Part shown: positions 20,324 to 50,728 of the stretch, piece by piece | How the letters are laid out: each line of letters opens with the position of its first letter | Position numbering within the stretch: position 1 is the first letter of the stretch | NCBI GenBank assembly: GCA_964188305.1 | Contig: OZ076885.1 | Strand: one strand, 5' to 3' | Length of the DNA: 64,000 nucleotides | Source: Podarcis bocagei | Lineage: Eukaryota | Notes under the pieces: generated by a model | Database searches by the model: none | What the model was told of the DNA's origin: nothing | Seen by the model: the letters and a program-made list of their open reading frames with translations, nothing else | Position numbers and translations under genes: made by a program

Positions 20324-20621
20324 GTGAGCTTTTTGCTAGGTTCACAGACATTTACTGTCACAATCACAATAAGGTGTATTGAAAGATGTTGTTTGGGATC
20401 CAGTACAGTTGTATGTGTTATGGGTGCAGCACCGTGTGCATTTTATGAAGTGCCACTTGCACTTTTCAGTCTCTAAATTTTAGTCTGCCCAATTATTTGC
20501 CCAAACACAAACACTCTGGTTTCCCAACTGGCTTCTTTCTGTGTGTTGTCCGATGTATGTAGATTCCTCCATCTGCCTGGCCTCAGATACAGTGGTTGTT
20601 GCTCCTCTATTTGATTGCCAG

Positions 20622-21478
20622 ATGTCACTGGGCAGCAAGATGGGGAGGTTCCTGGATCTTCTGGACAGCCCAGGCACCAGAGAGGAAGTTCACCATCCAC
20701 ACCTGCAGAAGAGCAAGAATCCTCAGTGCCAGCTTCTGATGAAGATTCACCAGCCAGAACTACAGAGAGTTGGCCATGGCCATTGTCATCATCTGAAACA
20801 CACAGCAACCTGGGGGAAGATTTTGAGGGATTTCCAACACCAGAGCGGACTCCGCAGTGTACAATGGACATACAATCTCCTGGGGATCAGTCTCTCAGTA
20901 GGACTCCCCAATATGAGAGTGACTCTCCTGTGGAGGGAAATGATGAAATGAACGAAGAGCACCATGGTGTTCAGCCTGTCCCTAGGGATCGGGGTTGGAG
21001 AGGGCAAACTCAGCTGACAGAGGGAGAGAGGTTATTAATGGAAACCAATAGTAGGATTGTACAGCTGCTGGAAAATATCAAGAGAGAGCATGCACAGTCC
21101 ATGGGTCTCATGTCACAGTCCATGGGCCGGATGGAGCTGCAGCTAGGCATTGTGGCTACATCCACAAGAGCCATCCATAACTACCTGTCTGAGATTTTAG
21201 CTTTCCTCAAACAACCAAGGACACAGGTCCTTGAAACACGTATCTCCCAAAGAGCCACACCTCATGTTGAGTTAACGAGTGCCTCAACGTGGACTGGTGA
21301 GGATGCAGTGGCAATGCCCACTGGATACTTACCAAGGGATGAAGGGATTAATGACTCTCAAGAAACACTGCAAGCCACACTGCCTCGTCGCAGTGGCCGA
21401 ATGCAGAGAGCCATAACAGAAAGGGCCTCGTTGCCCATGCCCATGCGCCAAGCAAAGGGGGGAGGGAAGAAAAAATAA
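20622..21478 (+). CDS. Intact 285-codon exon derived from the Harbinger Myb-like gene C-terminus (acidic S/P-rich region, coiled coil, basic tail GGGKKK*); candidate alternative last exon of SHANK2
   Basis: ORF-track 20615..21478. Opens just after TGA 20612-20614 at acceptor gctcctctatttgattgcCAG|AT GTC (phase 1). Heptad-rich segment LTEGERLLMETNSRIVQLLENIKREHAQSMGLMSQSMGRMELQLGIV. Confidence 0.6.
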
Positions 21479-34375: not shown

Positions 34376-36791
34376 GGATAACAGAGGAAGAACGGCAATT
34401 TTTGGCTCCTCCCATGCTAAAATTTACCAGAAGTCTATCCATGCCAGACACCTCTGAAGATATCCCTCCTCCTCCACAGTCTTTACCTCCATCACCACCA
34501 CCTCCATCTCCTTCTCTTTACAACTCCCCCAAATCTCCAGTGTCTAGAATATATGGGACAATTAAGCCTGCATTTAATCAGAATTCAGGTGCAAAGTTAG
34601 CTATTTCAGGTAGATCTGAAAATATGGGAACGGTGATAAGGGACAAAGGGATATATTACCGGAGAGAGATGGACCGTTATTCTCTAGATTCTGAGGACTT
34701 ATATAGCAGAAATGCCTCAACTCAGGCAAGCTTCAGAAACAAGAGAGGTCAGATGCCGGAGAACCCATACTCTGAAGTTGGAAAAATAGCAAGCAAAGCA
34801 GTGTATGTCCCAGCCAAGCCAGCAAGACGGAAGGGAATGCTAGTGAAACAATCTAATGTTGAGGATAGTCCAGAAAAAACCTGCTCTATTCCAATTCCAA
34901 CTATCATTGTTAAAGAGCCATCTACCAGCAGTAGTGGGAAAAGTAGTCAAGGAAGCAGCATGGAAATTGACCCACAGTCTTCAGAGCAACCAGGACAGCT
35001 CAGACCTGAAGATAACTTGACTGTCAGTAGTCCATTTGCAGCAGCCATTGCAGGGGCAGTGAGGGATAGGGAGAAAAGATTAGAAGCCAGGCGTAACTCT
35101 CCAGCTTTCCTTTCCACAGATTTGGGAGATGAGGATGTTGGGCTATCGCCTCCAATGCCACGCTTGAGACAGTCTAAGTTTAGTGATGAGGGAATGTTTG
35201 GTAATGAAGACAACTTTAGGCAACTTGTATCACCATCTCCTATCCCAGCACCTAGAGAGCCTGAAAATATTTTTAATAGCAGTGAATCAAGTAATCAAAG
35301 TGATGCAAGGACACCAAACCCTCCAACCCCAACATCCATGGGTTCAGAAAATAATGTGTTGGCAACTCAGAATGCTGGTATGTCCAGTTTGGATAACTAT
35401 GTTCATCCACTCACAGGGAAATTACTGGATCCAAATTCACCTTTAGCCCTTGCCCTTTCTGCCAGAGATAGAGCCATGAAGGAACAAACCCAGCAAATTC
35501 CAGGGAAAGGAGAATCTGGCAAAGCAGACCTTAATAAACCCCTTTATATAGATACAAAGATGAGGTCCAACATCGAAACTACATTTCCAGTGACAGCTAC
35601 AATTGCTAGGCAAAATACGCGTGGTCCACTAAGGCGGCAGGAGACGGAGAACAAATATGAGACAGATACGGGGAAAGAGAGGAGGCCTGAAGAAAAGAAG
35701 AACATGCTGATCAATATTGTGGATACCTCACAGCAGAAGTCCGCTGGTTTGCTCATGGTTCATACGGTAGATACAGCGCAGTCCAATGAGACCCCTGATG
35801 AAAAGGAAGAGGAAAGTGCTGAGATAGATGTGGATACTGAAAAGCCTCCACCAGAGGCGCAGGAAAGTACAGAAACAGCAGAAAGTGGACCAGATGAAGC
35901 TGACATGCCTGAGCTACCTGCATCTCCCTGCAAAACTATTGTAGCAGTTGGCTCCGTTGATGATCCAATCATTTTACCGTTCCGTATCCCTCCACCCCCT
36001 TTAGCATCTGTTGACCTTGATGAAGATTTCATCTTTACTGAGCCATTACCACCGCCTTTAGAATTTGCTAACAGTTTTGATATCCCTGATGACCATTCTG
36101 TCCCAGGCTCTGCACTAACAGACTTGCTCAAACACAGAAAAAATGGAACTCCACCTGCTTCATTCAATCCTACTCAACCCTCAAATTCAATAGACAGTAA
36201 GAAACCAGTGGGTCTTTCAAACTGTTTGCCTGCCTCATTTTTACCACCGCCTGAAAATTTTGATAATGTCACTGACTCTGGGATTGAAGAGGTGGACAGT
36301 CGAAGCAGTAGTGATCATCACCTAGAGACAACCAGCACTATCTCAACTGTGTCCAGCATCTCTACCTTATCCTCTGAAGGTGGTGAGAACTTGGATACTT
36401 GTACAGTCTATGCAGATGGGCAAACATTTCTGGTGGACAAACCCCCAGTACCTCCTAAGCCAAAAATGAAGCCCATAATCAACAAAAGCAATGCACTTTA
36501 CAAGGATGCGCTAATTGAAGAAACTGTAGATAGTTTTGTTATTCCTCCACCTGCCCCACCCCCACCTCCTATCAGCGCACAGCCCGGTATGGCTAAAGTT
36601 GTACAGCAAAGGACCTCTAAGCTATGGGGTGATGTAACGGAGGTTAAAAGCCCAGTTCTCTCAGGCCCAAAGGCTAATGTCATTAGTGAATTGAACTCAA
36701 TACTGCAGCAAATGAACAGAGAGAAATCATCAAAGCCAGGGGAAGGATTGGAGTCACCTCCAGGAATAAAAACAGCAAGTCTTAGTACAAG
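34376..36791 (+). CDS. SHANK2: SHANK2 large proline-rich exon (G)ITEEERQFLAPPMLKFTRSLS...TASLSTR, 2416 nt, phase 1-2
   Basis: ORF-track 34402..36795 (its 'M' is an internal TTG Leu). tttttttaAAG acceptor, GTAAAT donor. Contains the Homer-binding PPLEF (36052-36066) and cortactin-SH3-binding KPPVPPKP (36439-36462) motifs. Confidence 0.98.
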
Positions 36792-38339
36792 GTAAATGCA
36801 ACTAAATTATTTTTTAAGTCTATAGTTTCCGTAAGTTTAAATTGCCTTTGCTTTCATTAATAATGTCTTAAATACCATTTAATCTTATGTTTAAAATGCA
36901 TGGTATTAATGCTCCAGTGTTAATTTTTGACCCTCTTAAAAATCTACAAAATACGTTAATTGCTATTATCATTTTTCACCTTTGCCCTTCTTTGTTTATG
37001 ATATTAACACGTATTGAAACATGCTATCTTTTACTATGCTGCTAGTTAAGAATCAATTTCACCTCTCCCTTCTAGAATCCCTGGTTATGTGTTTTATGGT
37101 TTACCCCTAACTTCTCCACATTTAATGAAAAAGTTTCAAAGTGGCTCTAAGTGACAGCTGACTGGTTATAGTTCTGATTTAATTTCAAGTTGATATTGCT
37201 TCAGCAGTAGCTATCTTATTTAGAATGTGTTGAGTAGTTTTGTGTGTTTTATTTTGCATGATACATATGTTTAGTTTACAATGCAAAGGGCCACATGTGG
37301 CGCTGCATGTATTTGCCAAGGTTTTTCGTCTTCCTGCTGCAATCCATTACAACCTCCAACAAAGCACTCCTGAGAATCCAGTTGGAGGTGGAAGGAAAGA
37401 GAGAAATCAGCAGTCCCACATGCAAATGTAGAAGTGCTTTCTGCTCACACCTTTGGATCCCAGCCAGAATCTCTCTATGCTTTTTTAGTAAATGAAATAA
37501 AAATCTGTCCTTTATTTGATAACAAATATTCTAATGCAACTTTAGAAAAAACCAAAAGTGACACATTTAATCTCAAAAATATTTATTTTATTGCATGGGC
37601 TTCAGTGCATGCAAGAAAGGAGAATGCACTAATGGACCATATTCTGGTTTCATTTTTTAAAATCAAGTTTCCTGCTGGATCATACCAGTTGCTCATTTGG
37701 TCTAGCATCTTGTTCTCACACTGTGCACATTCAGTTACTCCAGTAAAACGATCAAGGTACATTAATGATTTGTTGTTTGAGCTGTTTGGTTTTAATTGTT
37801 GGAAGAAGAGTAGTCACAAAGCCTGTCCTTTAGTCTTTTCTAGGGTGGCCAGAGACAAAGGATACAAGGGCTTTTGCACCTCTCTCAATTGTGGAATTTT
37901 GTTGTGTGCATCTTATCATGCAGGGGTGAAAGCAGCTGCACTTTCAAAAAAATCATTTTCTACACAGCTATTAAAAATGTGAGAGGTCTGTCATCCTCTC
38001 CTCTTCATCAGAGCATACAACTGCCATGGTGAATAATACATTACTTTTCTAAAACTTTTGTAAAAAACATGTTCTCCATGGTGGTAGTATATGGTGGCAG
38101 GGTCAGCTTTGGCATCCCATCTTCAACCACCCTGCCTTACAGCCAGTACCACTGAAAGATTGCATTTGTCAGACATATTTTTAAAGTCAATATTGTGAAA
38201 TTTATTGAGCCTTTGGGTGGATTTGTTGCACTTGCTATGATAGGTTCTAGGACTTTCAACTGAAGGTGGCAACCCATGGTAGCGGAACAGTAGAGTGATG
38301 TATGAAACCCCAAACTCTGAATGTACCATTTTTTACCTG

Positions 38340-38698: not shown

Positions 38699-40723
38699 TG
38701 GTAGAGAATTGTCATGAGTCTCTCTGCCCATTACCATACATCTTATTGTATAATACAAATGATCCACAGGGATCCTATGTGCACAGACACTCAATTCTTG
38801 TGTCGGTTCTCACTCAAACTAGGGATGACATACCAGTGGGGCAGTGATGAAATTTCTATGTGGAGCTTCCATATCATGTTACTTTATGGGTCGAACGGGT
38901 TTGTGTGCTGTGCTGCTTCTCCAGTATATTAAGTCAAGTGAATATCTAAACCACAAATGGATACCTAAAAATTATACTCCTGTTAGTGAACCTAGCAGTT
39001 CTTATTTGTTCTTCCCTTTCATTTAGCAATCTGATTTACCAGTGAATAGGCAAAGGGTTCATAAGGTGTACTCTTTGTAAAGTATTTATTTTATTTATTT
39101 CACTCCTGCCTTTTTATAAAACATAACTTTTAGGTGTAGGAAGGACACATTACTGATTTTCCCCTTCCCCTTGAAAATATGCTCCAGAAGATTTGTGGAC
39201 CTTCCAGAACAGTGTTGTGGCTATGGGAAGAAGTGGAGTGGGATCATACAAAGGGCCTCAGCCATTTCTTCCAGTTCCAGTAGAAATCTTCTCTGGATCT
39301 CCGTCCTTTCCATATATGGAAGAAGCCCTTCTGTTCAGGAAAGGCCAAATCGGAACCAAACTTGTAATATCAAAAGTACTGCTAAGTTTCTGTTACTCTA
39401 TAAATTACAATGTTCTCCCTGTTCCAGGGGTCTGTTGACACTCAGAGGTGCGCATGGAATTCCAAAAAAATGTTGGTTTCCATTAGTTTCAATGGAGGGA
39501 GCTAAAACACAACAGGATTTACTCTTTCTATTCTTGGCTTAGGTCACACAGTGAGGAAAATCCAAAGGCACGGAGAGTCATATCCACAAGAGCTTGCTAA
39601 CTCATGAAGTTTAAGTAATAATCAAAATGTGGCTAGCTTTCTGCTTGTTGTAGAGATGTGAACAGTATGGTTTGTGTGTCTTCAGTGTGTATTAGCAGTA
39701 TTTGGAAATTATAATATTGGAAAGCGTATGTAGCATTGGCAGCCAAATTTGCCATGACATTTGTGGCTTTCAGTAAGGAAATGTAGCAATCCTAACAGTA
39801 TACTGGAGTGTTGATTCACTTTGCAACTTTCAGTTTAGTATGAAGATTCATTTAATTTTAATAAGCAAATTAAGGTAATTTCTCCCTGTGCTGCATACTT
39901 ATTAAAAATTTGTCCACTCAGCTGGCAGTGGAAGTCCCAATTATAAACCAACTTAAATGTTAAGGTACTTCACAGTAATTGTATCAGTGCGATTCTTTCC
40001 TATGGTGCCAGTACACTCACCTTTTAATCAGATTTCCCTAATGGGGTATAACAAATATAACATAGCTAAAACATATGAATTAAACTAGACAGAATTAAGG
40101 CAGTTTAAAGAAAAAGGATGCCACTCTATATTGACTATGTCATTGTCAATTTTACAAGCTTATCTTGTAGTATCATTTGGATACAGATTTCCCTGAAAAC
40201 TGTTTATTTTTCCGCATTGCTATAGTTTGTAGGTTCTAGAAATAAAAATCTGTATACTTCCATATACTGATATTTGAACAATGGAAGGGTTTTTTCCTTA
40301 TTGACTTTTATGTCATATTTCAAGAAGTAAAAACCAGGACACCCTGAATGTTGTTTCTTCTTTTTTGTTTTTCCAAAAACGCCGGGAACCACGATTTATT
40401 GTATTGATTTAGGCATGGGCATAGTCAAGGGGGGCAGTAAAGCAACAGAATTACTTAACTAGATGGCCAATCACATCGGTTCTGTACCCCCACCCCCACA
40501 AAAGTCCTGGCTACACCCATACATGTGTGCATTAGAAGGCACCATCAGCTGTAGAACAGTGGTTTTCTGAGAGTGTGCAAAGCCTTGAAAATTGCTTTTG
40601 GAGAGTGCTCTCACTAATTTACATTCACACAAACACACACCCAGCAATTCACACATTCAGCAATTGCTTCTTGCTCCTCTTGCTCCAGGCAAGTGTATAA
40701 AGGGCAAAATTAAGAGTGCTCTT

Positions 40724-40772: not shown

Positions 40773-41682
40773 AAAAGATATAACCAGCCTACCTCCATAC
40801 CAGTCTTAAGAGTTTGGATGTTTCCAAACAAGTTTTCCACCCTTTGGAGTAAAAAAAAAAATTTCAACTACTATGCATTTCAAAGACACATTTGTGTGTG
40901 TGTGTTGAAATTATGCCATCAAAACCAAGTGCATAGTAAAATTGCCAAAATAAAAGAATTAAGTCCTTAGCTGAATTCAATCTGTAAATGACAAGCATAA
41001 AAAATCAGTCCCTGAGCAGATGGGTTAGTTTTTGTTCTTTGTACTCCCATCCTGCTTTAAGCTGTTTATGGGAAGAAATTGGGTGTCCTTGCCACATAAT
41101 CTTTGTTAAATTAATCTTACAAAAAGCAAATTATAAAGACCTCGCAAAAGCCTGTTGATTATCAGAGAGCAGCTGTTTGAGCTCCTTCTCCCAGGCTTTT
41201 ATTATAAACTCTGTACTCCCTACCACCACCACCCATTCATAAATACGCAGGTAAATACATTAGCAAGTAAATAAGCAGGTTAAACTACCTCTGAACCAAA
41301 AAGTTGTATTAAAACACAATGATCAAGTATCCACTGAATAATTACTGTATCAATAGAATAAAGGAGGTAACTGTGAAGAGGGAAAGAAAGGGGCAGGAAG
41401 CATCTTGAACAATTTAGGCTGGAACCAGTATCTGTTATCCTGGAGGTTTATTCTAATCCATAATGATGTTACAATAGTTGCAGGGTTGCCAGCCTGAAAC
41501 TGTTGACTTAATATCTTATTCAGGGAAGATTCTGTTCTTCTGAAACTCTTTTGTACGCTAGTGATATTTTTTACTATGTGTCCTCAGTCCTTCCTGAAGC
41601 CAGGAGGTATTCAAGTGTTTCATTGCCATGCATTAATATACTGAGTTGTAAATGTTTCATTGTTGACACAATTTTGCCCCAG

Positions 41683-41686
41683 ACAG
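41683..41686 (+). CDS. SHANK2: Candidate 4-nt SHANK2 microexon ACAG (frameshifting; removes SAM)
   Basis: tgttgacacaattttgcccCAG|ACAG|GTAAGT: branch-like TTGAC, UGC just upstream of the AG, consensus donor CAG|GTAAGT, YCAY-rich downstream intron. Confidence 0.5.
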
Positions 41687-42633
41687 GTAAGTGAAAAGTA
41701 AATCAAGAAGATGAGTATATGCATTGGCAGATATTGAATTGGTCACCTTTGAACTTCATAACCTTAGAGTTTCATAAATAACCCAACAATCAGAGAGGTG
41801 TTTTTTTAAAAGCTGAACTTCGTTACATCCTTTACTTTCACTTCATCTTGTTAACTGTTTGTCGGCCAATTTTGCAGATGCTTTTGCTTTGTAACTCTAC
41901 AGTGTCTCAGTCATTCCATTTTGTCATTTTATTTGCTCTCATGACTGCCGTTAACAGAAGAGGGGCATTCTGAAGTGCCATGAAGTAAGTGACGACCAAA
42001 GGGGGTTTATTTGGGGGTTGTTTCTTTTTTTAACCCATGCATTGGTTCACATTAGTTACTTTTTGTTCGTTTTTCATTCATAGTTTGGATTAGATATTTC
42101 TCCTATCCAGAAGTGGTAGCCATTCTTTAAAATTCACCATAGGTCTTCAACATTAGACCCTTTCTTACATAAATTTCACTAGTACTCCTGTTAGGTATCA
42201 TTCGTCAAGAAATAGGAAAAGGGTCAGGTAACTTTAAGGACATTTTCTATGAGTTCTGGGTGTGGTTTTCCAGGCTAATTAGGCACAGGTGGTGGTGTGT
42301 ATAAAGAGAAGAAGTTGCAGTTTGCAACTGCCTGCAAAAAGAAAACACCCACATGCTTTGTGTTTGTTGTTTGTATAGCCTTAATGAAACTCTTGTTTGA
42401 GTGTTTTACACCAGTCTTGTGGTTCTGTCATCTGCCGCCAGGGAAAATTTGCCTCCAATAACTCCAACTCTAGAGTTAGTGAAAGTGTGTAGTTAAAAAA
42501 AAATTAAATTATAATATGAGGAATTGAGCCAAAGGATAAAATTCAGCCATGTCTAAGCCTTGTTGAAATCAATGACACAGTCAAATGCTTAATTTATATT
42601 GCATTGTACTTGTAAAGCCTCTTACCTAAGTGT

Positions 42634-42829: not shown

Positions 42830-44144
42830 CCTAGTATGGTGGCATGAACTATTGGCACGAATGATTAAGTTATTGTTCAGGTTGATGAAAGTTTTCAGTT
42901 CAATTTCTGTGAGGGAAAGGGAGAGTGTCAGTTTGGTTGAGAGTAAGAAGTTGCACGGGGGCAGACTTAGGACTGAAAATAGGTCCTGGGTTGTAGAGAA
43001 GTTATTGGACAGAAAATTTAGAGACAAGGAATCCGAAGGAAGGCTCTGAGGAGGACAATCTTGAAAGTAAAGTAAGCGGAGAATGAAGTAAGGTGCAAAG
43101 ATGACAGAACTGTGGCAAAAGTGGTCTCTGAAGAAACTTCACATAGCTTTTGTCACTCCTGACATATGCTGTAGAAGGAGAGCTGGGTAGGCTAGTTAAG
43201 AAAAATATAGGTAACAAAGTAGCTGTTAGGTCTATAACAGCCTTCATCATACTGGTGCCTTCCATATGTTTTGGACTACAACTCCCATGAGCCCCAGCCA
43301 GCATGGCCAGGTTGGCAAAGACTTATCTAGAATCTAGATACACCAAGAAAATTCTGCCAGTTATTAATTCTGCCTTTAGCGTAGCGTTGTGAACTGGCAA
43401 CAAGTATCAATAAGCAGTGCAGGTGACTGTATTTCACATATTGAGATTTTCTAGGCAGCCATTTCTTCTAGTCTATAATTGTATTGCACATAATTATGAT
43501 GATAGAGAAGCCTCTGGTATTTGTTGGCTGAGCTGGTGCAAACTCATGCACTTTCCCAACTGCCAAGGAAACAGTGTTGTCAGAATATTTTCTGAGGCAA
43601 GGAGGACCTCTGAAGAAATTGCATAATGCTTAAGGACTAGAAGGTCTATAGGGGAAGAGAGAGGAATGTTGTGGAGAATCTGCACATGCAGCAGATTGGC
43701 TAAAGCAGTGGGACAAAGTAGGCAGTGCATTAAAAAGCAGAGGTCTGAGGAAACGATGGGTGGGGAAGGGATGGGAGTTTAAGAAAACAAGAGCCAATGA
43801 AAACTTCAGATGGGGCCTAGGAACAATAGTGGCAAGACAGAAGTCTGAGTGTCACTTCTGGAGGGCTGGAGACTATGCTGGGTTGAAGACTATCAGGTTG
43901 TAATGGAACTGCTATTCATTTAAGAGATACATAGATTGGAATTTGTGTTAGTGGTGGCATCTGCTGACTCCACCTCCCCACTTCCCACCAAAGCTGGGGT
44001 TGCATGGCTTACCAGGTTACATGTCTGTAGCATTGGCTTCCAGGTTCCCCTCCCAGAGAAGTGGTCGCAACCGGCTTCCACCAAAATCTCACCAGAACTC
44101 AGAAGCCTGCACTGCAGCTGCTTCTTCTGCGAGGTGTTCTGGGT

Positions 44145-44962
44145 TCCAGGCACTCTTGGAGGAAACTGATTTTCGAGATCCATTTCAGTCAGCATTTAGG
44201 CCAAGCTTTGGCACAGAAACTACCTTATGATCTCTGTCAGGAAAGAAATGTGTTCCAGTCAATTATCAACTTCTCAGTGGCTTTTGATACCATAAACCAT
44301 GGTATCCTTCTGGAGTGGTTGTTCGAATTAGGGGTGTGTGGTACAGCTTTGTGGTGGTTCTGGTCTTACTTGGATGGTCATTTCCAGAGGGTGATGCAGG
44401 GTTTGCGCTGAATCTTCAATGTAGAGTTCCTTGGGGTTCAATTTTATCCCCTATGCTGTTTAACATCTACATGAAACCCCTGAGTGGAGATACAGAGTTT
44501 TGGAGTATGTCATCAGCAATATGCTGGTGACACATATAGCTCTATCTCTCCTTTGCATCTGCAGGTGTGGCAGTGGATGTGCTGGACTGATGTCTTGCCT
44601 CAGTTATGGACTGGATGAGAGCCAATAAACCGAGGCTCAATCCAGATAAGACAGAGGCACTGTTAGTGGATGGTCCCTGGATCGGATGAATGGGAGATTT
44701 CCTGCTTTTGATGGGGTTACACTCCCTCTGAAAGAGTGGTCTTGGGTGGTCTCAGTGGCGTGGAGTGTCTTCCATCAGCTTCAGCTTGTGGCCCAGCTGC
44801 ACCCCTATCTGGACAGGGATAGCCTAACGTCTGTTGTCTATGCTCTGGTAACCGCTAGGTTAGATTACTGCAACACATTATACGTAGGGCTGCCACTAAA
44901 GACTGTTTGGAAACTTCAGCAGGTGCAGAATTCGGCATCCAGGTTGCTCGCCAGAGCAAGAC
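44145..44962 (+). mobile_element. Decayed L2-clade LINE reverse transcriptase fragment
   Basis: LEETDFRDPFQSAFRPSFGTET, AFDTINHGILL, VPWGSILSPMLFNIYMKPL, QYAGD (YADD), WMRANKPRLNPDKTE, LVTARLDYCN; frameshifted. Confidence 0.9.
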
Positions 44963-45451
44963 AGCTTGAGCTGCAAAATGGCAGCCACTTGAAAGGGGAC
45001 TGATTGCAGAAGTTGGGGGAAGAGACCTTCAACACAAATTCAGGATTTCCTCCCAATGCAAACAGCCGCTTCAAATGTATTATTTTCGTCATGACTCCAG
45101 CAGGGAAATAATGATTTAATCTCTCACTCTCCCCACCCACTGACTGCTGCAATCTTGATCATTATAAGCCCCACACCAGGTAGCTATTATTTGAATTATT
45201 TAAAATGCATATTAAAATAAAGATGAACATCATGTACAGTTTGGCTCTACATCCTGTGGTCCTTAGTTCACTTGCTAAATAGCAAATTCCATTGAATTCA
45301 TGAGAACTTTCTTGTGAGTAAACATACATCTTAAAAAGTACATCTTAAAAAGATGTTTGGGCAACAGTTTGGCATATAAATAACTCTTGTGTCCATGTAG
45401 TTCATTTTAGCAGGAAAAAAACCACCTTGTATATTGAAGCTTTCTGCTAGT

Positions 45452-45715: not shown

Positions 45716-48700
45716 CTGCTAGTAAACGTTTATTTAAAATGTAGTACTATATTTAAATCCTATTAAAATGGCTCAAAATAACTTTAATAGGAATTCATGC
45801 CTACAGACTGCTTTTCCTGGGAAAATTCAGTGATGTGACACAGTAATTACATATTGTGAAATAATCTAAGACAACATAATGTGTATTGCAATCAGAGGAA
45901 TCAAAGGAAGTGAATATTTGCAACAAAATATCACTGTATGCTTATTCCTAATAGAGCCAGCTTTTCATATATATATTCCTGACAATATAAAAAGCCATAT
46001 TAGAAAAGTAAATTTGGTTGGAAAGAATTGTCTCTAGTCTAATAACCGCTTATTGACAATTTACAGAAAAGGGTATAGTCCGAAGTTGCTAACGGATACT
46101 TTATTTCTCACAGCTATGGATGTGGATGTGTTTGATATTTCTAGAAGAAACTCTTTCCCCCCTTCCAGCAATCAATATTTTAAACAGCTCAGTTTAGTGG
46201 TTTTTTATTTCTGAAAGACTTTTTTTAAATCCCTAACTGCTCTATCTTAAATAAAATGCACAGCTTTGGTCTGGATGCCATTTAATGTAATTTTTTAAAT
46301 ATAAATCATTATTTTGGGTAAATTTTCAGGTCCTTTGTGTTTGAATTACAAATCAATAACCTTTGACCAATGTTTCTCTCACTGTGATTGTAAAATAATT
46401 ATCACAAATTCAAAGAAACTGTTTAGACATGCTGGGAATTGTAAGCGCTGGTGATTCGTATTTGACGTTTTTCCTGCAGCACTTCTGTCAAAGAGAGAAG
46501 CTACTTTTTAAACTTAACAGATGTTTCCAACTTGGCAGTGGAAAGTGCAGCATTAAATACTTCCGAGTTGTCTTCTTCCTCCCATTCACCTAAATAGCTT
46601 CATGGGCAAAGTCTCCTCAGGGTACATTTTTAAGTCTGAGACATGTTTTTCTTTGTACCAGAGAATATGGTACAAACCAACCCAGACCCCATTGGCCTGT
46701 TTGTTAGCATGCCATCAAAGGCATGTTGTCACTATAGACATGCAGTTTGGTATGTGATAAGGCCAGAAGCAATGCACAGAAAGGAAGAAAGGAGCCTGCA
46801 TGTGCTGTGCACATTTTGACCCTTCTCCTTAGTCTTTGTATTCTCTGAGATAACAATCTGCTAAGGATATAAAACAAGATGTTAGAGACTGAAGGCCTGT
46901 CCACACTTTTGCTTGTCCCATGCCTAGAAAGCACAGTACCCAGAGGGTTTTTTTTCTTGCCCTGAAAAAACAGTTTACTGCTGAATTGGAACACATGGCA
47001 ATCTGTAGAAAGCCCAATTGCCACTTGTTCCAGTTCAGTATTAAACCATGGGTTTTCCCAGGGGAAAGTGAGGGGGAAATCGGAAGTGTGGACAAGCTCT
47101 AAGCATCAACATTCTAGAATCCACAGTAATTTTTAAATTATTTTTTACCCACTGTAATTTACAGTGATTTCTGCAGAAATTGAATACTGACCTTAGAAAA
47201 TCTTTTCTTTAGTTACAAATAACATTTTTTGCATTCTTGTTAATTCTTTACTGCCATGTTGGGAAGATTCACTGTTTGATTCCCTTTATCCATACAGAGA
47301 GCTATTAATACTAGCCCATCCATGCTGCACTTTAAATCGCTCCTTCTGCTCCTCTGTATAGGAATTTGACATTTCTGATGTCCCATACATTAGTTGTTGT
47401 ACTACTACTACGTAAATTGTGCCACAAATGAACTTTTGAACTCCCTTTTATGACCACACCAGAGATGGAAGGGGGAAGCATGCAAACCTGGGGCAGGCAA
47501 GACTTGTTTCCGTCCATTGACCTGCATAATGCTAAGCCAAACTTTATCTCATTCCAGACAAAGTGTGATCTGTTAGCAAAGATTTATATGGTTTACCACA
47601 CATGGTTTGTCTGGGGGAGATAAACTGTGACCAAGGCTGGCCCAAGACATTTTGACACCTGAGGTCTCATTATCATTTGGTGTAGAAGTTGATTTCGTTT
47701 TTAACTGAAAATAATGTTAGAATACAACTAATCAACTCTGTGTTGATAATTTAAAATGCACAGATTATGGCCCAAATCCCAGGAACTGTGCAACTTGCTT
47801 TACATATTCAAGAGAGTTTGTGCTTGTGTTTTTTTACCCATTGCATGCCAAACGTATTTTGAAAACGAAGGGGTATTCAGAAGTAGTTTGTAATGTGATA
47901 TGTGTCTCTGCTGTATGAAGGAAAAAAGTAAAATTCTCACTTGACATACCTGAAGTACCTATTTAGATCCAAGCCTATATTTTTATACTTAAAAGTTATT
48001 CACACAACAATCTTAAAAAGCACCAGAAAGGCACAGTTCTCACTCAAATCAAAAACAGATTAAAGATGGATTGGGAGTTGTGGAAGGAGGGGCAATGAGT
48101 GCAGCTGAGCGGATAGATGCTAAGATATTGAAAATGTGCATGTGCTGTGACTTGGAGTGGACACTAACACCTGTTATATCCCCTCTGATTAGTCAGGCTT
48201 GCATTGCTAAGACTTCCTTGGATCTGTTGCTCCATCTTGATGCCCCAATTACAGTTGTAGGTAGAAGTCCTCTTTGCCAAGTTTACTGCAACCTGTTATT
48301 TCAGTTTTGTTTTAGTTACCAATTATTTATGCTTCGTGACCTCAAGGCTAGATTCATGTAATTGTCAGAGATCAGAGACCTCCTACCTGCATGGTAAACT
48401 TTCTTCCTTTGAACGTGGAAGGCTAGCAGTGTTACTAGCTTCAGATTTCCCCAGGTTAAAAGAGCCTTCAAATGAGCTGGATCTGTAATAGAATCTTGCT
48501 TCGACAAATAAAAACAGGGGCTGCTCTTATTTTTATCCTTTAAAAAAATAAAAATGCATTATTTTGTATATTAATAAAACAGGATGCATCAGAAATGCCA
48601 GAAGTAAGGATGAATAAAAATCTATAGTCCATACACATTCATTTACTCTTAGTCCCAGGACTCCGCTAGACTGGTAAAGAAAAAGCGATTTATATGTGTT

Positions 48701-49184: not shown

Positions 49185-49542
49185 CAGGGGCGGAGGAAGG
49201 GGTGTGTGCTGGGGTGGGTCGCCCCAGGTGTCACCACTAAGGGGGGTGACAAAACGCTGAGCGGCACTCACCGCGGGGCCTGCAGCACGCCCGAGCCATG
49301 CATCTCGTCTGGGAATGACACGGTGGCTGGGGCGCCTGCAGGCTCTGCGCTGCCCCAAACAGTCCACCCGCCTCCTCCCCGTCAGCTGTAGGGCGGCTGA
49401 GTGGGAGGAGGCAGGCAGATTCCTCGGAGGCCCCGCAGAGCCTCCTGTCCTGGTTCGCCCCGCCCCATAGGCGGCTGGCTCTGCCCCTGGGTGCAGGGCA
49501 CGCATGCCACCCCAGGCGCCCAATTGGCTTGCTCTGCCAATG
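49185..49542. mobile_element. GC-rich hAT non-autonomous element, TSD CATAGGAC/CGTAGGAC
   Basis: Termini CAGGGGCGGAGG / GCTCTGCCAATG; 7/8 TSD match, the mismatch being a CpG transition. Confidence 0.8.
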
Positions 49543-50154
49543 CGTAGGACTACCCCTGATGAGCCAGGTCACTGTACTAAGAGCATTCAGCTAGTTCAAA
49601 ACACAATGGCCTGCCTCCTGAAGGTGAAGTTCCCAAGCATCAGAACTGGGTTCTTCTAGGATTCTGGCCTGTGCTTAGCAAGACAGGTTTCAGCATGTAA
49701 CTTACCTTGGGAACTGCCTCCTCTTCTGTACCCTGTACCCTTCTGTCTTCTGATCTCTTAGATGTAATTTCCTTAGTGCATCATCTGTGCAACGAATTAG
49801 AACAATGACACAGAGAAGCATCCTTGGTTGTTTTGTCCAGTTTTGGAACTCTCTTGTGAGATTCACCACACTTAAATGCCTTCTGCTACCATAATGCTCT
49901 TTGGGACAATGATTCAGTGGCTAGAGTTAATTTTTAGCAGCATATTTGAGATTGTCTTTGACTTTTAAAATATTTGTAAAGCTTGCTCATAGTTTTCTGC
50001 CACTATTGTTTTCATAAAGTCGTATGGTATCTCTTTGGCATTTATATATATCTTTAATACGTAATCGTGTCATAAGTTAGCAATGAGCTGATTTGTATTT
50101 TTAATACGTGGAGAGTCTGAATATTTCCTGTTCATTTTTATTTGTTTATTTCAG

Positions 50155-50728
50155 GGGCACAGAAGTCATGAGCACTGTCTCAGGTACTCGAAGTTCAACC
50201 ATCACTTTTACTGTCCGGCCTGGAACTAGCCAGCCAATCACACTGCAGAGCAGATCCCCAGACTATGATAGTAGGACACCAGGAGCAAGACATGCTCCAA
50301 GCCCAGTGGTTTCACCAACAGAAATAAGTAAGGACATCATGCCAGCTCCTCTGACTGCTGCTGCTCCAGTTGCATCTCCTTCTCCAACACTTTCTGATGT
50401 TTTTAGCCTACCCAGCCAGCCTCCTTCGGGGGACCTCTTCGCTTTGAACACAGGGCGCAGCAGGTCTCCTTCTCCCTCAATCTTGCAACAGCCAATATCA
50501 AATAAGCCTTTTACAACTAAGCCTGTCCACCTGTGGACCAAGCCAGATGTGGCAGATTGGTTGGAGAGTTTAAACTTAGGTGAACATAAAGAGACCTTTA
50601 TGGATAATGAAATAGATGGCACTCACTTACCAAACCTTCAGAAGGAAGACTTGATAGACCTTGGAGTGACTAGAGTTGGTCACAGAATGAACATAGAAAG
50701 AGCCTTGAAACAGCTACTGGACAGATAA
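50155..50728 (+). CDS. SHANK2: SHANK2 terminal coding exon with C-terminal SAM domain (...WTKPDVADWLESLNLGEH...RMNIERALKQLLDR*)
   Basis: tttgtttatttCAG acceptor. Phase 2 matches the preceding exon (AG+G=Arg). The SAM sequence is typical of SHANK2. TAA at 50726-50728. Confidence 0.98.

What the first reader, a model, noticed from the sequence alone, without database searches (positions are those of the whole stretch)
41661..41692. Candidate 4-nt microexon (ACAG) that would switch off the SAM domain
In the last intron: tgttgacacaattttgcccCAG|ACAG|GTAAGT. It has a branch-like TTGAC, a UGC just upstream of the AG (the SRRM3/4 microexon enhancer position) and a consensus donor. Inclusion gives AG+ACAG+GGGCAC... 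= ...SLST-RQGHRSHEHCLRYSKFNHHFYCPAWN* with TAG at 50227-50229. The stop lies in the last exon, so it should escape NMD and yield a SHANK2 lacking the SAM oligomerisation/synaptic-targeting domain. SAM-less Shank2 variants are known in mammals; whether they arise from this same microexon is not verified here.
Basis: partly seen in the sequence, partly recalled or inferred. Interest (0 to 1): 0.75.

Follow-up and report, generated by a model that had tools for sequence, protein, structure and literature searches.

The report
Conserved intronic splice signal in SHANK2
The proposed 4-letter exon in the last intron of the wall-lizard SHANK2 gene exists as a letter pattern, but only its donor half is kept in a gecko and in birds, so it is more likely an old recursive or decoy splice signal next to a deeply conserved stop-carrying exon than a microexon that switches off the SAM domain; its use in RNA could not be tested.

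Summary
The motif cag|ACAG|GTAAGT is at 41680-41692, in the 13,363-base last intron of SHANK2 (Podarcis muralis, 100% match to isoform X7). The +4 frame does end at TAG 50227-50229. As a bare pattern it occurs at chance frequency.

Comparison with a gecko, three birds and two mammals splits the motif. CAG|GTAAG (41684-41691) is invariant in all five sauropsids, against a background of 13-17% invariant columns. The upstream AG (41681-82), which would make the 4-base exon, and the UGC are found only in Podarcis.

The conserved site lies 206-222 bases upstream of an exon-like block (41903-41984). That block is 82-83 bases long, 86% invariant between lizards and birds, recognisable in mammals, frame-shifting and stop-carrying.

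My reading: an old splice element, either a recursive (zero-length-exon) site or the donor of cryptic stop-carrying exons, that belongs to a non-productive splicing module. The 4-base exon would be at most a Podarcis-specific by-product.

None of the 252 proteins fetched carries the predicted tail. The known SAM-less SHANK2 form arises elsewhere, by read-through of exon 22. The scan noted a similar conserved tiny splice module in CACNA1A of this genome.

The parts
36700..36791 (+). 3' end of the large proline-rich SHANK2 exon ('exon 24'). It ends ...ACAAG, and its last two bases AG start a split codon. The donor gtaaat begins at 36792.
   Evidence: 100% identical to P. muralis SHANK2 isoform X7.
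41588..41686 (+). Candidate squamate-only cryptic exon X (99 bases). Its acceptor-like tcctcag| at 41581-41587 is shared with the gecko. In the SHANK2 frame it hits a stop after three codons.
   Evidence: No counterpart found in birds. Not tested in RNA.
41661..41683 (+). Pyrimidine-containing stretch with branch-like TTGAC (41663-67) and TGC (41675-77) upstream of the conserved AG.
   Evidence: 35% of columns invariant in four sauropsids. Pyrimidine fraction 0.55 in squamates and 0.60-0.75 in birds, against 0.49 before all AGs of the intron. The TGC is Podarcis-only.
41681..41682 (+). Upstream AG that would be the acceptor of the 4-base exon. Found only in Podarcis: gecko has CAAT, roadrunner and the metagenome bird have CAAA, and the passerine has CAAG, which gives an AG 3 bases upstream instead.
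41683..41686 (+). The proposed 4-base exon ACAG.
   Evidence: No RNA or protein support.
41684..41691 (+). Conserved CAG|GTAAG: a 5' splice-site consensus directly abutting an AG (recursive / zero-length-exon type motif).
   Evidence: 8 of 8 columns invariant in Podarcis, gecko, passerine and roadrunner, and also in a further bird-like contig retrieved without reference to this motif. It sits 206-222 bases upstream of exon Y in every one. A shuffled flank gives such a match in 0.02-0.035% of trials per species.
41831..41902 (+). Conserved intron flank of exon Y, with branch-like GTTAAC and two acceptor-like AGs (41876-77 and 41901-02).
   Evidence: 55% of columns invariant in four sauropsids. 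The acceptor gcag|TGT is shared with narwhal and desman.
41903..41984 (+). Exon Y: an 82-base exon-like block that is frame-shifting and stop-carrying. In the SHANK2 frame it adds SVSVIPFCHFICSHDCR and then a stop 30 bases before its own donor.
   Evidence: 86% of columns invariant between squamates and birds. Found by BLAST in passerine, roadrunner, gecko, narwhal and desman. Lengths are 82-83 bases, 79 in desman. No Rfam match.
41985..41993 (+). Donor of exon Y, GTAAGTG, invariant in all six amniotes compared.
50155..50725 (+). Coding part of the last SHANK2 exon (SAM domain, normal stop at 50723-50725). The +4 frame stops at TAG 50227-50229.

Best explanation
The feature kept by evolution is not a 4-base exon. 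It is a splice signal, CAG|GTAAG, preceded by a modest pyrimidine stretch. An acceptor AG directly abuts a near-perfect donor, which is the pattern of a recursive (zero-length-exon) splice site. It lies roughly mid-intron (4,895 + 8,468 bases) and about 215 bases upstream of a deeply conserved 82-base stop-carrying exon.

Proposed mechanism (inferred, not shown). Exon 24 is first joined to the AG at 41686, which rebuilds a donor (AAG|GTAAGT). That donor is then joined to the last exon and leaves no trace in the mRNA. The rebuilt donor competes with the exon Y donor at 41985. When the latter wins, a stop-carrying segment stays in the mRNA. The stop lies 30-40 bases before the last junction, so the product would be a SHANK2 without its last 190 residues and SAM domain, or an unproductive transcript.

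In Podarcis a single change made a second AG four bases upstream. If that AG is chosen in the first step, the same pathway would leave ACAG in the mRNA.
For: CAG|GTAAG is invariant in five sauropsid sequences, against a background of 13-17% invariant columns. Its spacing to exon Y is fixed at 206-222 bases. It is the only AGGTAAG in the whole intron of both birds tested. A chance match at that position is expected in 0.02-0.035% of shuffles per species. A pyrimidine-rich stretch lies immediately upstream in birds, 0.60-0.75 against a background of 0.49. No acceptor further upstream is shared between birds and squamates. The motif fits the published recursive consensus (Y)nNCAG|GTAAGT, and the model of a recursive site followed by a stop-carrying RS-exon. 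Lariat data report recursion over a broad range of intron sizes. The exon Y donor and acceptor are conserved across amniotes.
Against: CAG before GT is also part of the ordinary donor consensus, so the 8-base island alone does not prove acceptor use. The pyrimidine stretch is weak in squamates, 0.55. Extra AGs 3-4 bases upstream in 2 of 5 taxa (passerine, Podarcis) are not what tight selection on a scarless recursive acceptor predicts. The intron is only 13.4 kb, whereas the sawtooth-defined vertebrate recursive sites (Duff 2015, Sibley 2015) sit in introns of about 170 kb or more (Table 1). The site is absent in desman and at best degenerate in narwhal, CACAG|GTGTGAGT without a pyrimidine tract. 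Exon Y has its own conserved acceptor, so it does not need this site.
Confidence: 0.35

Rival explanations
1. Donor only. CAG|GTAAG is the conserved 5' splice site of one or more cryptic, stop-carrying exons whose acceptors differ between lineages (in Podarcis 41588-41686, 99 bases). Alternatively it is an intronic U1-binding decoy that regulates the neighbouring exon Y or retention of the last intron.
For: The whole 8-base island is explained by the donor consensus alone. Podarcis and gecko are alignable at 78% for about 215 bases upstream of the site and share an acceptor-like tcctcag| 99 bases upstream. AGs just upstream of the site come and go, as expected if that position is exon interior. 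Narwhal has a donor-like CACAG|GTGTGAGT at the matching distance, 197 bases upstream of exon Y, without a pyrimidine tract.
Against: No upstream acceptor or exon body is conserved between birds and squamates: 13% invariant columns, and none with a good tract in the roadrunner. In birds the sequence just before the site looks like a pyrimidine tract, not an exon end. No annotation includes such an exon.
Confidence: 0.3
2. ACAG is a regulated, neuron-specific 4-base microexon whose inclusion frameshifts SHANK2 and yields a stable SAM-less protein.
For: Both splice signals are present and the donor is a 9-of-9 consensus. The donor is evolutionarily kept, so the spliceosome probably sees this place. 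The upstream CAG lies 16 bases after a branch-like TTGAC and would be the first AG met. The +4 stop is in the last exon, so by the established rule it should escape nonsense-mediated decay.
Against: The acceptor AG and the UGC are private to Podarcis among six sauropsid sequences. Known neural microexons are strongly conserved with their flanks and mostly keep the frame. None of 252 fetched SHANK2 proteins, including P. muralis, Pogona and Anolis isoforms, has the tail. The pattern occurs at chance frequency. Four bases between acceptor and donor cannot be bound at both ends at once, so it could only be spliced stepwise.
Confidence: 0.07
3. Alternative acceptor. The AG at 41686 is the 3' splice site of a long form of exon Y (41687-41984, 298 bases), and the GTAAG after it has no donor role.
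For: The AG with an upstream pyrimidine stretch is conserved, and a conserved donor follows at 41985. 298 bases is a normal exon size.
Against: It does not explain why GTAAG is invariant while the next 140 bases are only 17% invariant. The long exon begins with a stop in the SHANK2 frame.
Confidence: 0.08
4. No splicing role. The 8-base island is a conserved protein-binding site in DNA (CAGGTA resembles the ZEB-type box, from my own knowledge), part of an intronic regulatory element around exon Y, or a slow-evolving accident.
For: Nothing shows use in RNA. The island is short. The region 41471-42063 as a whole is constrained in squamates.
Against: The island coincides exactly with the strongest possible donor consensus on the sense strand of the gene. 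It lies next to a block bounded by conserved acceptor and donor signals on the same strand. Enhancers usually show broader blocks of conservation.
Confidence: 0.2

Closest known systems
Recursive splice sites / ratchet points (Drosophila Ubx and others; vertebrate sites with RS-exons, Sibley 2015) and the 'zero-length exon' of rat alpha-tropomyosin (Grellscheid and Smith 2006), as summarised in PMC5126111 and PMC10156609
   Same: Juxtaposed acceptor and donor that fit (Y)nNCAG|GTAAGT. Located mid-intron. Conserved over about 280 million years (my estimate for the bird-lizard split). A conserved downstream donor could define a stop-carrying RS-exon.
   Different: The host intron is 13 kb, not hundreds of kb. 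The pyrimidine tract is weak in squamates. Extra AGs lie just upstream in two lineages. No intermediates, lariats or sawtooth pattern were seen here. The site is lost or degenerate in the two mammals examined.
Neural SRRM4/SRRM3-dependent microexons, including the known 9-base Shank2 microexon (PMC11283458)
   Same: Tiny size, a neuronal synaptic gene, and a UGC close to the acceptor in Podarcis.
   Different: Four bases is not a multiple of three. The acceptor and UGC are not conserved. There is no transcript evidence. The known Shank2 microexon is a different, frame-keeping exon elsewhere in the gene.
SAM-less SHANK2 isoform AF141901 (alternative 3' end in exon 22b; Leblond 2012, PMC3276563)
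   Same: The result would also be a SHANK2 without the SAM domain.
   Different: That isoform arises by read-through of the exon 22 donor upstream of the proline-rich exon. According to earlier finding s1-345161, in this window it corresponds to the open exon at about 20615-21475, roughly 21 kb upstream of the motif, and no microexon is involved.
Conserved stop-carrying ('poison') cassette exons and decoy exons in retained introns
   Same: Exon Y is more conserved than the neighbouring coding exons. It is frame-shifting, carries a stop, and is bounded by conserved splice signals. One-base length differences between clades change the frame without loss of conservation, so the constraint is on the RNA or DNA rather than on a protein.
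   Different: Its stop lies only 30-40 bases before the last exon junction. By the 50-55-base rule it would probably escape decay and give a truncated protein rather than act as a classical poison exon. Inclusion in RNA is not shown.

Membership tests
Neural microexon (SRRM3/4 type) | Length 3-27 bases, usually keeping the reading frame | tested here: not met
   Four bases is within the size range but shifts the frame, giving the stop at 50227-50229.
Neural microexon (SRRM3/4 type) | Exon, acceptor and flanking intron conserved across vertebrates | tested here: not met
   The acceptor AG 41681-82 is absent in gecko and three birds. Only the donor half is kept.
Neural microexon (SRRM3/4 type) | UGC-containing enhancer just upstream of the acceptor | tested here: inconclusive
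   TGC is present at 41675-77 in Podarcis and absent at the aligned position in the other five sauropsid sequences. Binding was not testable.
Neural microexon (SRRM3/4 type) | Inclusion in neural mRNA | not testable with these tools
No protein with the tail is among the 252 fetched.
Recursive splice site / zero-length exon | Acceptor directly abutting a donor, (Y)nNCAG|GTAAGT | tested here: met
   ccccagacag|GTAAGT in Podarcis, with the same AG|GTAAG in all five sauropsids. Consensus as cited in PMC5126111. The pyrimidine tract is only moderate.
Recursive splice site / zero-length exon | Evolutionary conservation of the site | tested here: met
   8 of 8 columns invariant from lizards to birds at a fixed distance from exon Y. 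Not kept in desman and degenerate in narwhal.
Recursive splice site / zero-length exon | Splicing intermediates: upstream exon joined to the site, lariats, sawtooth read depth | not testable with these tools
Recursive splice site / zero-length exon | Very long host intron (classical vertebrate cases) | tested here: not met
   The intron is 13,363 bases. Lariat-based work reports recursion in a broader size range (PMC10156609), so this feature is not strictly defining.
Recursive splice site / zero-length exon | Downstream donor defining an RS-exon that usually carries a stop | tested here: inconclusive
   The conserved donor at 41985 would give a 298-base stop-carrying RS-exon. However, exon Y has its own conserved acceptor.
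Conserved stop-carrying cassette exon (exon Y) | Conserved acceptor and donor, length not a multiple of three or an in-frame stop, nucleotide-level rather than protein-level conservation | tested here: met
   Lengths are 82, 82, 83, 83, 82 and 79 bases. Stops occur in five of six species. A one-base indel between squamates and birds changes the frame while identity stays at 86% invariant columns.
Conserved stop-carrying cassette exon (exon Y) | Inclusion in mRNA and effect on transcript or protein level | not testable with these tools
   No reads. No fetched protein ends with the predicted tail.

The most novel reading that the evidence does not exclude
An ancient zero-length recursive splice site in the last SHANK2 intron was turned, by one A-to-G change in the Podarcis lineage, into a 4-base exon. 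Recursive removal of the intron would then leave an ACAG scar that frameshifts SHANK2 and removes the SAM domain. This would be an observable birth of a microexon from a recursive site, in the gene of an autism-linked synaptic scaffold.
Probability: 0.1. Interest if true: 0.7.

Novelty: new member of a known kind. Interest (0 to 1): 0.4.

Why it matters
SHANK2 needs its C-terminal SAM domain to reach and build the postsynaptic density (PMC8760046), and loss of SHANK2 function is linked to autism. A splice module in the last intron that has been kept for hundreds of millions of years, and that can end the reading frame just before the SAM-coding exon, would be a built-in way to make SAM-less or unproductive SHANK2 transcripts. 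I found no paper that describes it. Recursive-type sites in short vertebrate introns are still poorly documented, so a site conserved from lizards to birds would be a clean case for experiments. For the scan, the lesson is that the striking 4-base exon is the non-conserved part of the pattern.

Tried and rejected
- **RNA reads.** The look-up of sequencing runs gave bulk and single-cell RNA raw-read runs of a close relative. All later work used 36480 onwards or other species.
- **Protein databases.** I looked for the +4 tail and for an exon Y tail in 120 SHANK2 hits, 120 last-exon hits and cluster members. None was found. The 'longer' last-exon proteins are genomic open frames running into the pyrimidine tract, not transcripts.
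- **Odd C-terminal tails in bird and gecko annotations** (Pavo, Columba guinea, C. livia, Sphaerodactylus). They map to other places in the intron, not to this site or to exon Y.
- **Rfam.** No match on 41300-42300.
- **Consensus folding of exon Y.** Only a weak stem between the exon interior and its donor, without covariation.
- **Cobra locus.** Uninformative: a 1,000-base N gap sits in the intron, and I left it unfilled.
- **Frog.** The intron is only about 1.1 kb and has neither element.
- **Contig look-ups.** Thamnophis, Varanus (twice), Tupaia and Alligator proteins were not on record.
- **Unnamed mammalian Logan contigs.** I did not fetch them, because they could be human.
- **Literature.** Searches for SHANK2 with recursive splicing, poison exon, cryptic exon or nonsense-mediated decay gave nothing relevant.

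Full report
**What is there.** The window carries the 3' part of SHANK2 of the common wall lizard. The large proline-rich exon translates to a protein 100% identical to Podarcis muralis SHANK2 isoform X7.
- That exon ends ...ACAAG at 36791, followed by gtaaat.
- The last exon starts at 50155 after ttcag and encodes the SAM domain up to the stop at 50723-50725.
- The intron between them is 13,363 bases.
- Joining AG + ACAG + the last exon gives RQGHRSHEHCLRYSKFNHHFYCPAWN and a stop at TAG 50227-50229.

**Chance.** As a pattern it is unremarkable. AGNNNNGTAAGT occurs twice in the window on both strands, against 1.86 expected from dinucleotide-preserving shuffles. AGGTAAGT occurs twice against 2.15 expected. 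The sequence alone cannot say whether this is a splice element.

**What is known.** The SAM-less SHANK2 of mammals (AF141901) results from an alternative 3' end in exon 22b, that is, read-through of the exon 22 donor upstream of the proline-rich exon (Leblond 2012, PMC3276563; see also PMC6060255). Earlier finding s1-345161 places the counterpart of that tail exon at about 20622-21478 of this window. I saw the open frame there but did not re-test it. The published Shank2 microexon is a 9-base, frame-keeping exon elsewhere in the gene (PMC11283458).

**Comparative test.** I fetched the orthologous intron from these sources:
- a gecko, Sphaerodactylus townsendi (L002);
- a Logan contig that is a passerine bird by protein similarity, 95.5% to Turdus and Taeniopygia (L001);
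- the roadrunner Geococcyx (L003);
- a frog (L004);
- the narwhal (L005);
- the cobra (L006);
- the desman (L007).

BLAST of the Podarcis intron finds only a few alignable islands. The strongest is at 41827-41998 in both birds, 41471-42063 in the gecko and 41903-41991 in the narwhal. The cobra intron has a 1,000-base N gap, which I left alone. The frog intron is about 1.1 kb and lacks the elements.

**The motif splits in two.** In the alignments CAG|GTAAG is identical in Podarcis, the gecko, the passerine and the roadrunner. The four bases before it read CAGA, CAAT, CAAG and CAAA, so the upstream AG that would make the 4-base exon is found only in Podarcis. The TGC is likewise absent elsewhere.

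In a four-sauropsid alignment, 41684-41691 is 8 of 8 invariant. The 330 columns upstream are 13% invariant and the 147 downstream are 17% invariant. The site lies 206-222 bases upstream of the next conserved block in every species and is the only AGGTAAG in the whole intron of both birds. In shuffled flanks, a CAGGTAAG at that distance appears in 0.02-0.035% of trials per species.

A scan of metagenome contigs used a 24-base word taken only from the downstream block, so it was blind to the site. It returned two contigs of one more bird-like host, and these also carry CACAAACAG|GTAAGG at the expected place.

In the mammals the site is not kept. The desman has no AGGT in the 600 bases upstream. 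The narwhal has only CACAG|GTGTGAGT, without a pyrimidine tract, 197 bases upstream.

**The neighbour.** The downstream block is exon-like on the same strand.
- Its acceptor is (y)gcag|TGT and its donor is GAA|GTAAGTG. The donor is invariant in all six amniotes.
- In Podarcis it spans 41903-41984 (82 bases). It is 82 bases in gecko and narwhal, 83 in birds and 79 in the desman.
- It is 86% invariant between squamates and birds. By pairwise identity it is at least as conserved as the flanking coding exons, which are 76-81% and 88-90% identical.
- Entered from exon 24 it shifts the frame and stops after 14-17 codons in squamates and birds. The stop is 30-40 bases before its own donor.
- A one-base length difference between squamates and birds changes the frame without any loss of nucleotide identity. 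The constraint is therefore not on a protein.
- By the established 50-55-base rule, such a stop would probably escape nonsense-mediated decay (inference).

Inclusion would thus give a SHANK2 without its last 190 residues and SAM domain. There is no Rfam match and no convincing conserved RNA structure.

**Mechanism.** The conserved island equals the recursive-site consensus (Y)nNCAG|GTAAGT (PMC5126111). The arrangement 'site plus downstream conserved donor' matches the RS-exon model and the zero-length exon of alpha-tropomyosin cited there. Lariat work reports recursion over a broad range of intron sizes (PMC10156609). I therefore rank a recursive or zero-length-exon site first (0.35).

The evidence is not clean:
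- CAG is also part of the ordinary donor consensus.
- The pyrimidine fraction before the AG is 0.55 in squamates and 0.60-0.75 in birds, against 0.49 for all AGs of the intron.
- Two of the five taxa have an extra AG 3-4 bases upstream, which a strictly scarless acceptor should not tolerate.

The close rival (0.30) is a donor-only element. Podarcis and the gecko are 78% identical for about 215 bases upstream and share an acceptor-like tcctcag| that would give a 99-base exon, 41588-41686, with an immediate stop. Birds have no counterpart.

In both readings the site belongs to a non-productive splicing module of the last intron. In both, the 4-base exon is only one possible pairing, and it is private to Podarcis. 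If the site is recursive, the new CAG 16 bases after the branch-like TTGAC could well be chosen first, and the ACAG scar would then be a by-product. That is the novel case (0.1).

**Transcript evidence.** None could be obtained. Of 120 SHANK2 proteins sharing the end of exon 24, 120 sharing the last exon, and cluster members from Podarcis, Pogona and Anolis, none has the RQGH tail or an exon Y tail. This is weak evidence, because aligners and gene predictors handle 4-base exons badly.

RNA raw-read runs of a close relative exist. I worked beside them. I also avoided unnamed mammalian contigs that might be human.

**Verdict.** The known SAM-less isoform arises elsewhere. The more interesting object is the pair formed by the conserved AG|GTAAG site and the deeply conserved stop-carrying exon 215 bases downstream. 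I found no paper that describes it. The scan earlier noted a comparable conserved tiny splice module in the last intron of CACNA1A of this same genome (s1-347486). I did not test that finding.

Noticed in passing
window 41903-41984 (flanks 41831-41993): An 82-base exon-like block with conserved acceptor and donor. It is 86% invariant from lizards to birds and recognisable in narwhal and desman. It is frame-shifting and stop-carrying, and would truncate SHANK2 just before the SAM-coding exon. It is in none of the fetched proteins or the searched papers.
   Followed up: partly
window 41471-41686: About 215 bases upstream of the conserved donor are 78% identical between Podarcis and the gecko but not alignable with birds. 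The stretch includes a shared acceptor-like tcctcag| at 41581-41587 (candidate 99-base cryptic exon).
   Followed up: partly
window 45834-45957: A further short intronic block alignable with both birds (74-78% identity: L001 11226-11308, L003 38657-38719). Function unknown.
   Followed up: no
window 39867-40077: An intronic block alignable only with the gecko (69% identity, L002 18995-19195).
   Followed up: no
window 49200-49600: A G+C-rich patch (0.64-0.69, CpG observed/expected 0.4-0.6) 550-950 bases upstream of the last exon, in an otherwise 36-46% G+C intron.
   Followed up: no
window 44031-45000: Overlapping open frames with reverse-transcriptase-like wording (for example FDTINH and LFNIYMKPL), probably a decayed LINE copy inside the intron. 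Not checked against any family library.
   Followed up: no
L005 22505-22579 and L003 35527-35604: A further block shared by narwhal and roadrunner (74% identity over 78 bases), about 0.5-0.7 kb upstream of exon Y. No match was seen in Podarcis.
   Followed up: no
window 41927-41992: The consensus fold pairs an invariant TTATTTGCT inside exon Y with its own donor AAGTAAGTG (8 pairs, many G-U, no covariation). This is a possible weak donor-masking stem.
   Followed up: partly
L003 31389-31484, 39991-40074, 42120-42194; L002 26667-26708: Unusual C-terminal tails or insertions in Pavo, Columba livia, Columba guinea and Sphaerodactylus SHANK2 gene models map to scattered places in this intron. They look like prediction artefacts, not shared exons.
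   Followed up: partly
window 20615-21475: A long open frame inside an upstream SHANK2 intron, already reported by the scan (s1-345161) as a conserved alternative tail exon. It probably corresponds to the exon 22b end of the known SAM-less isoform.
   Followed up: no
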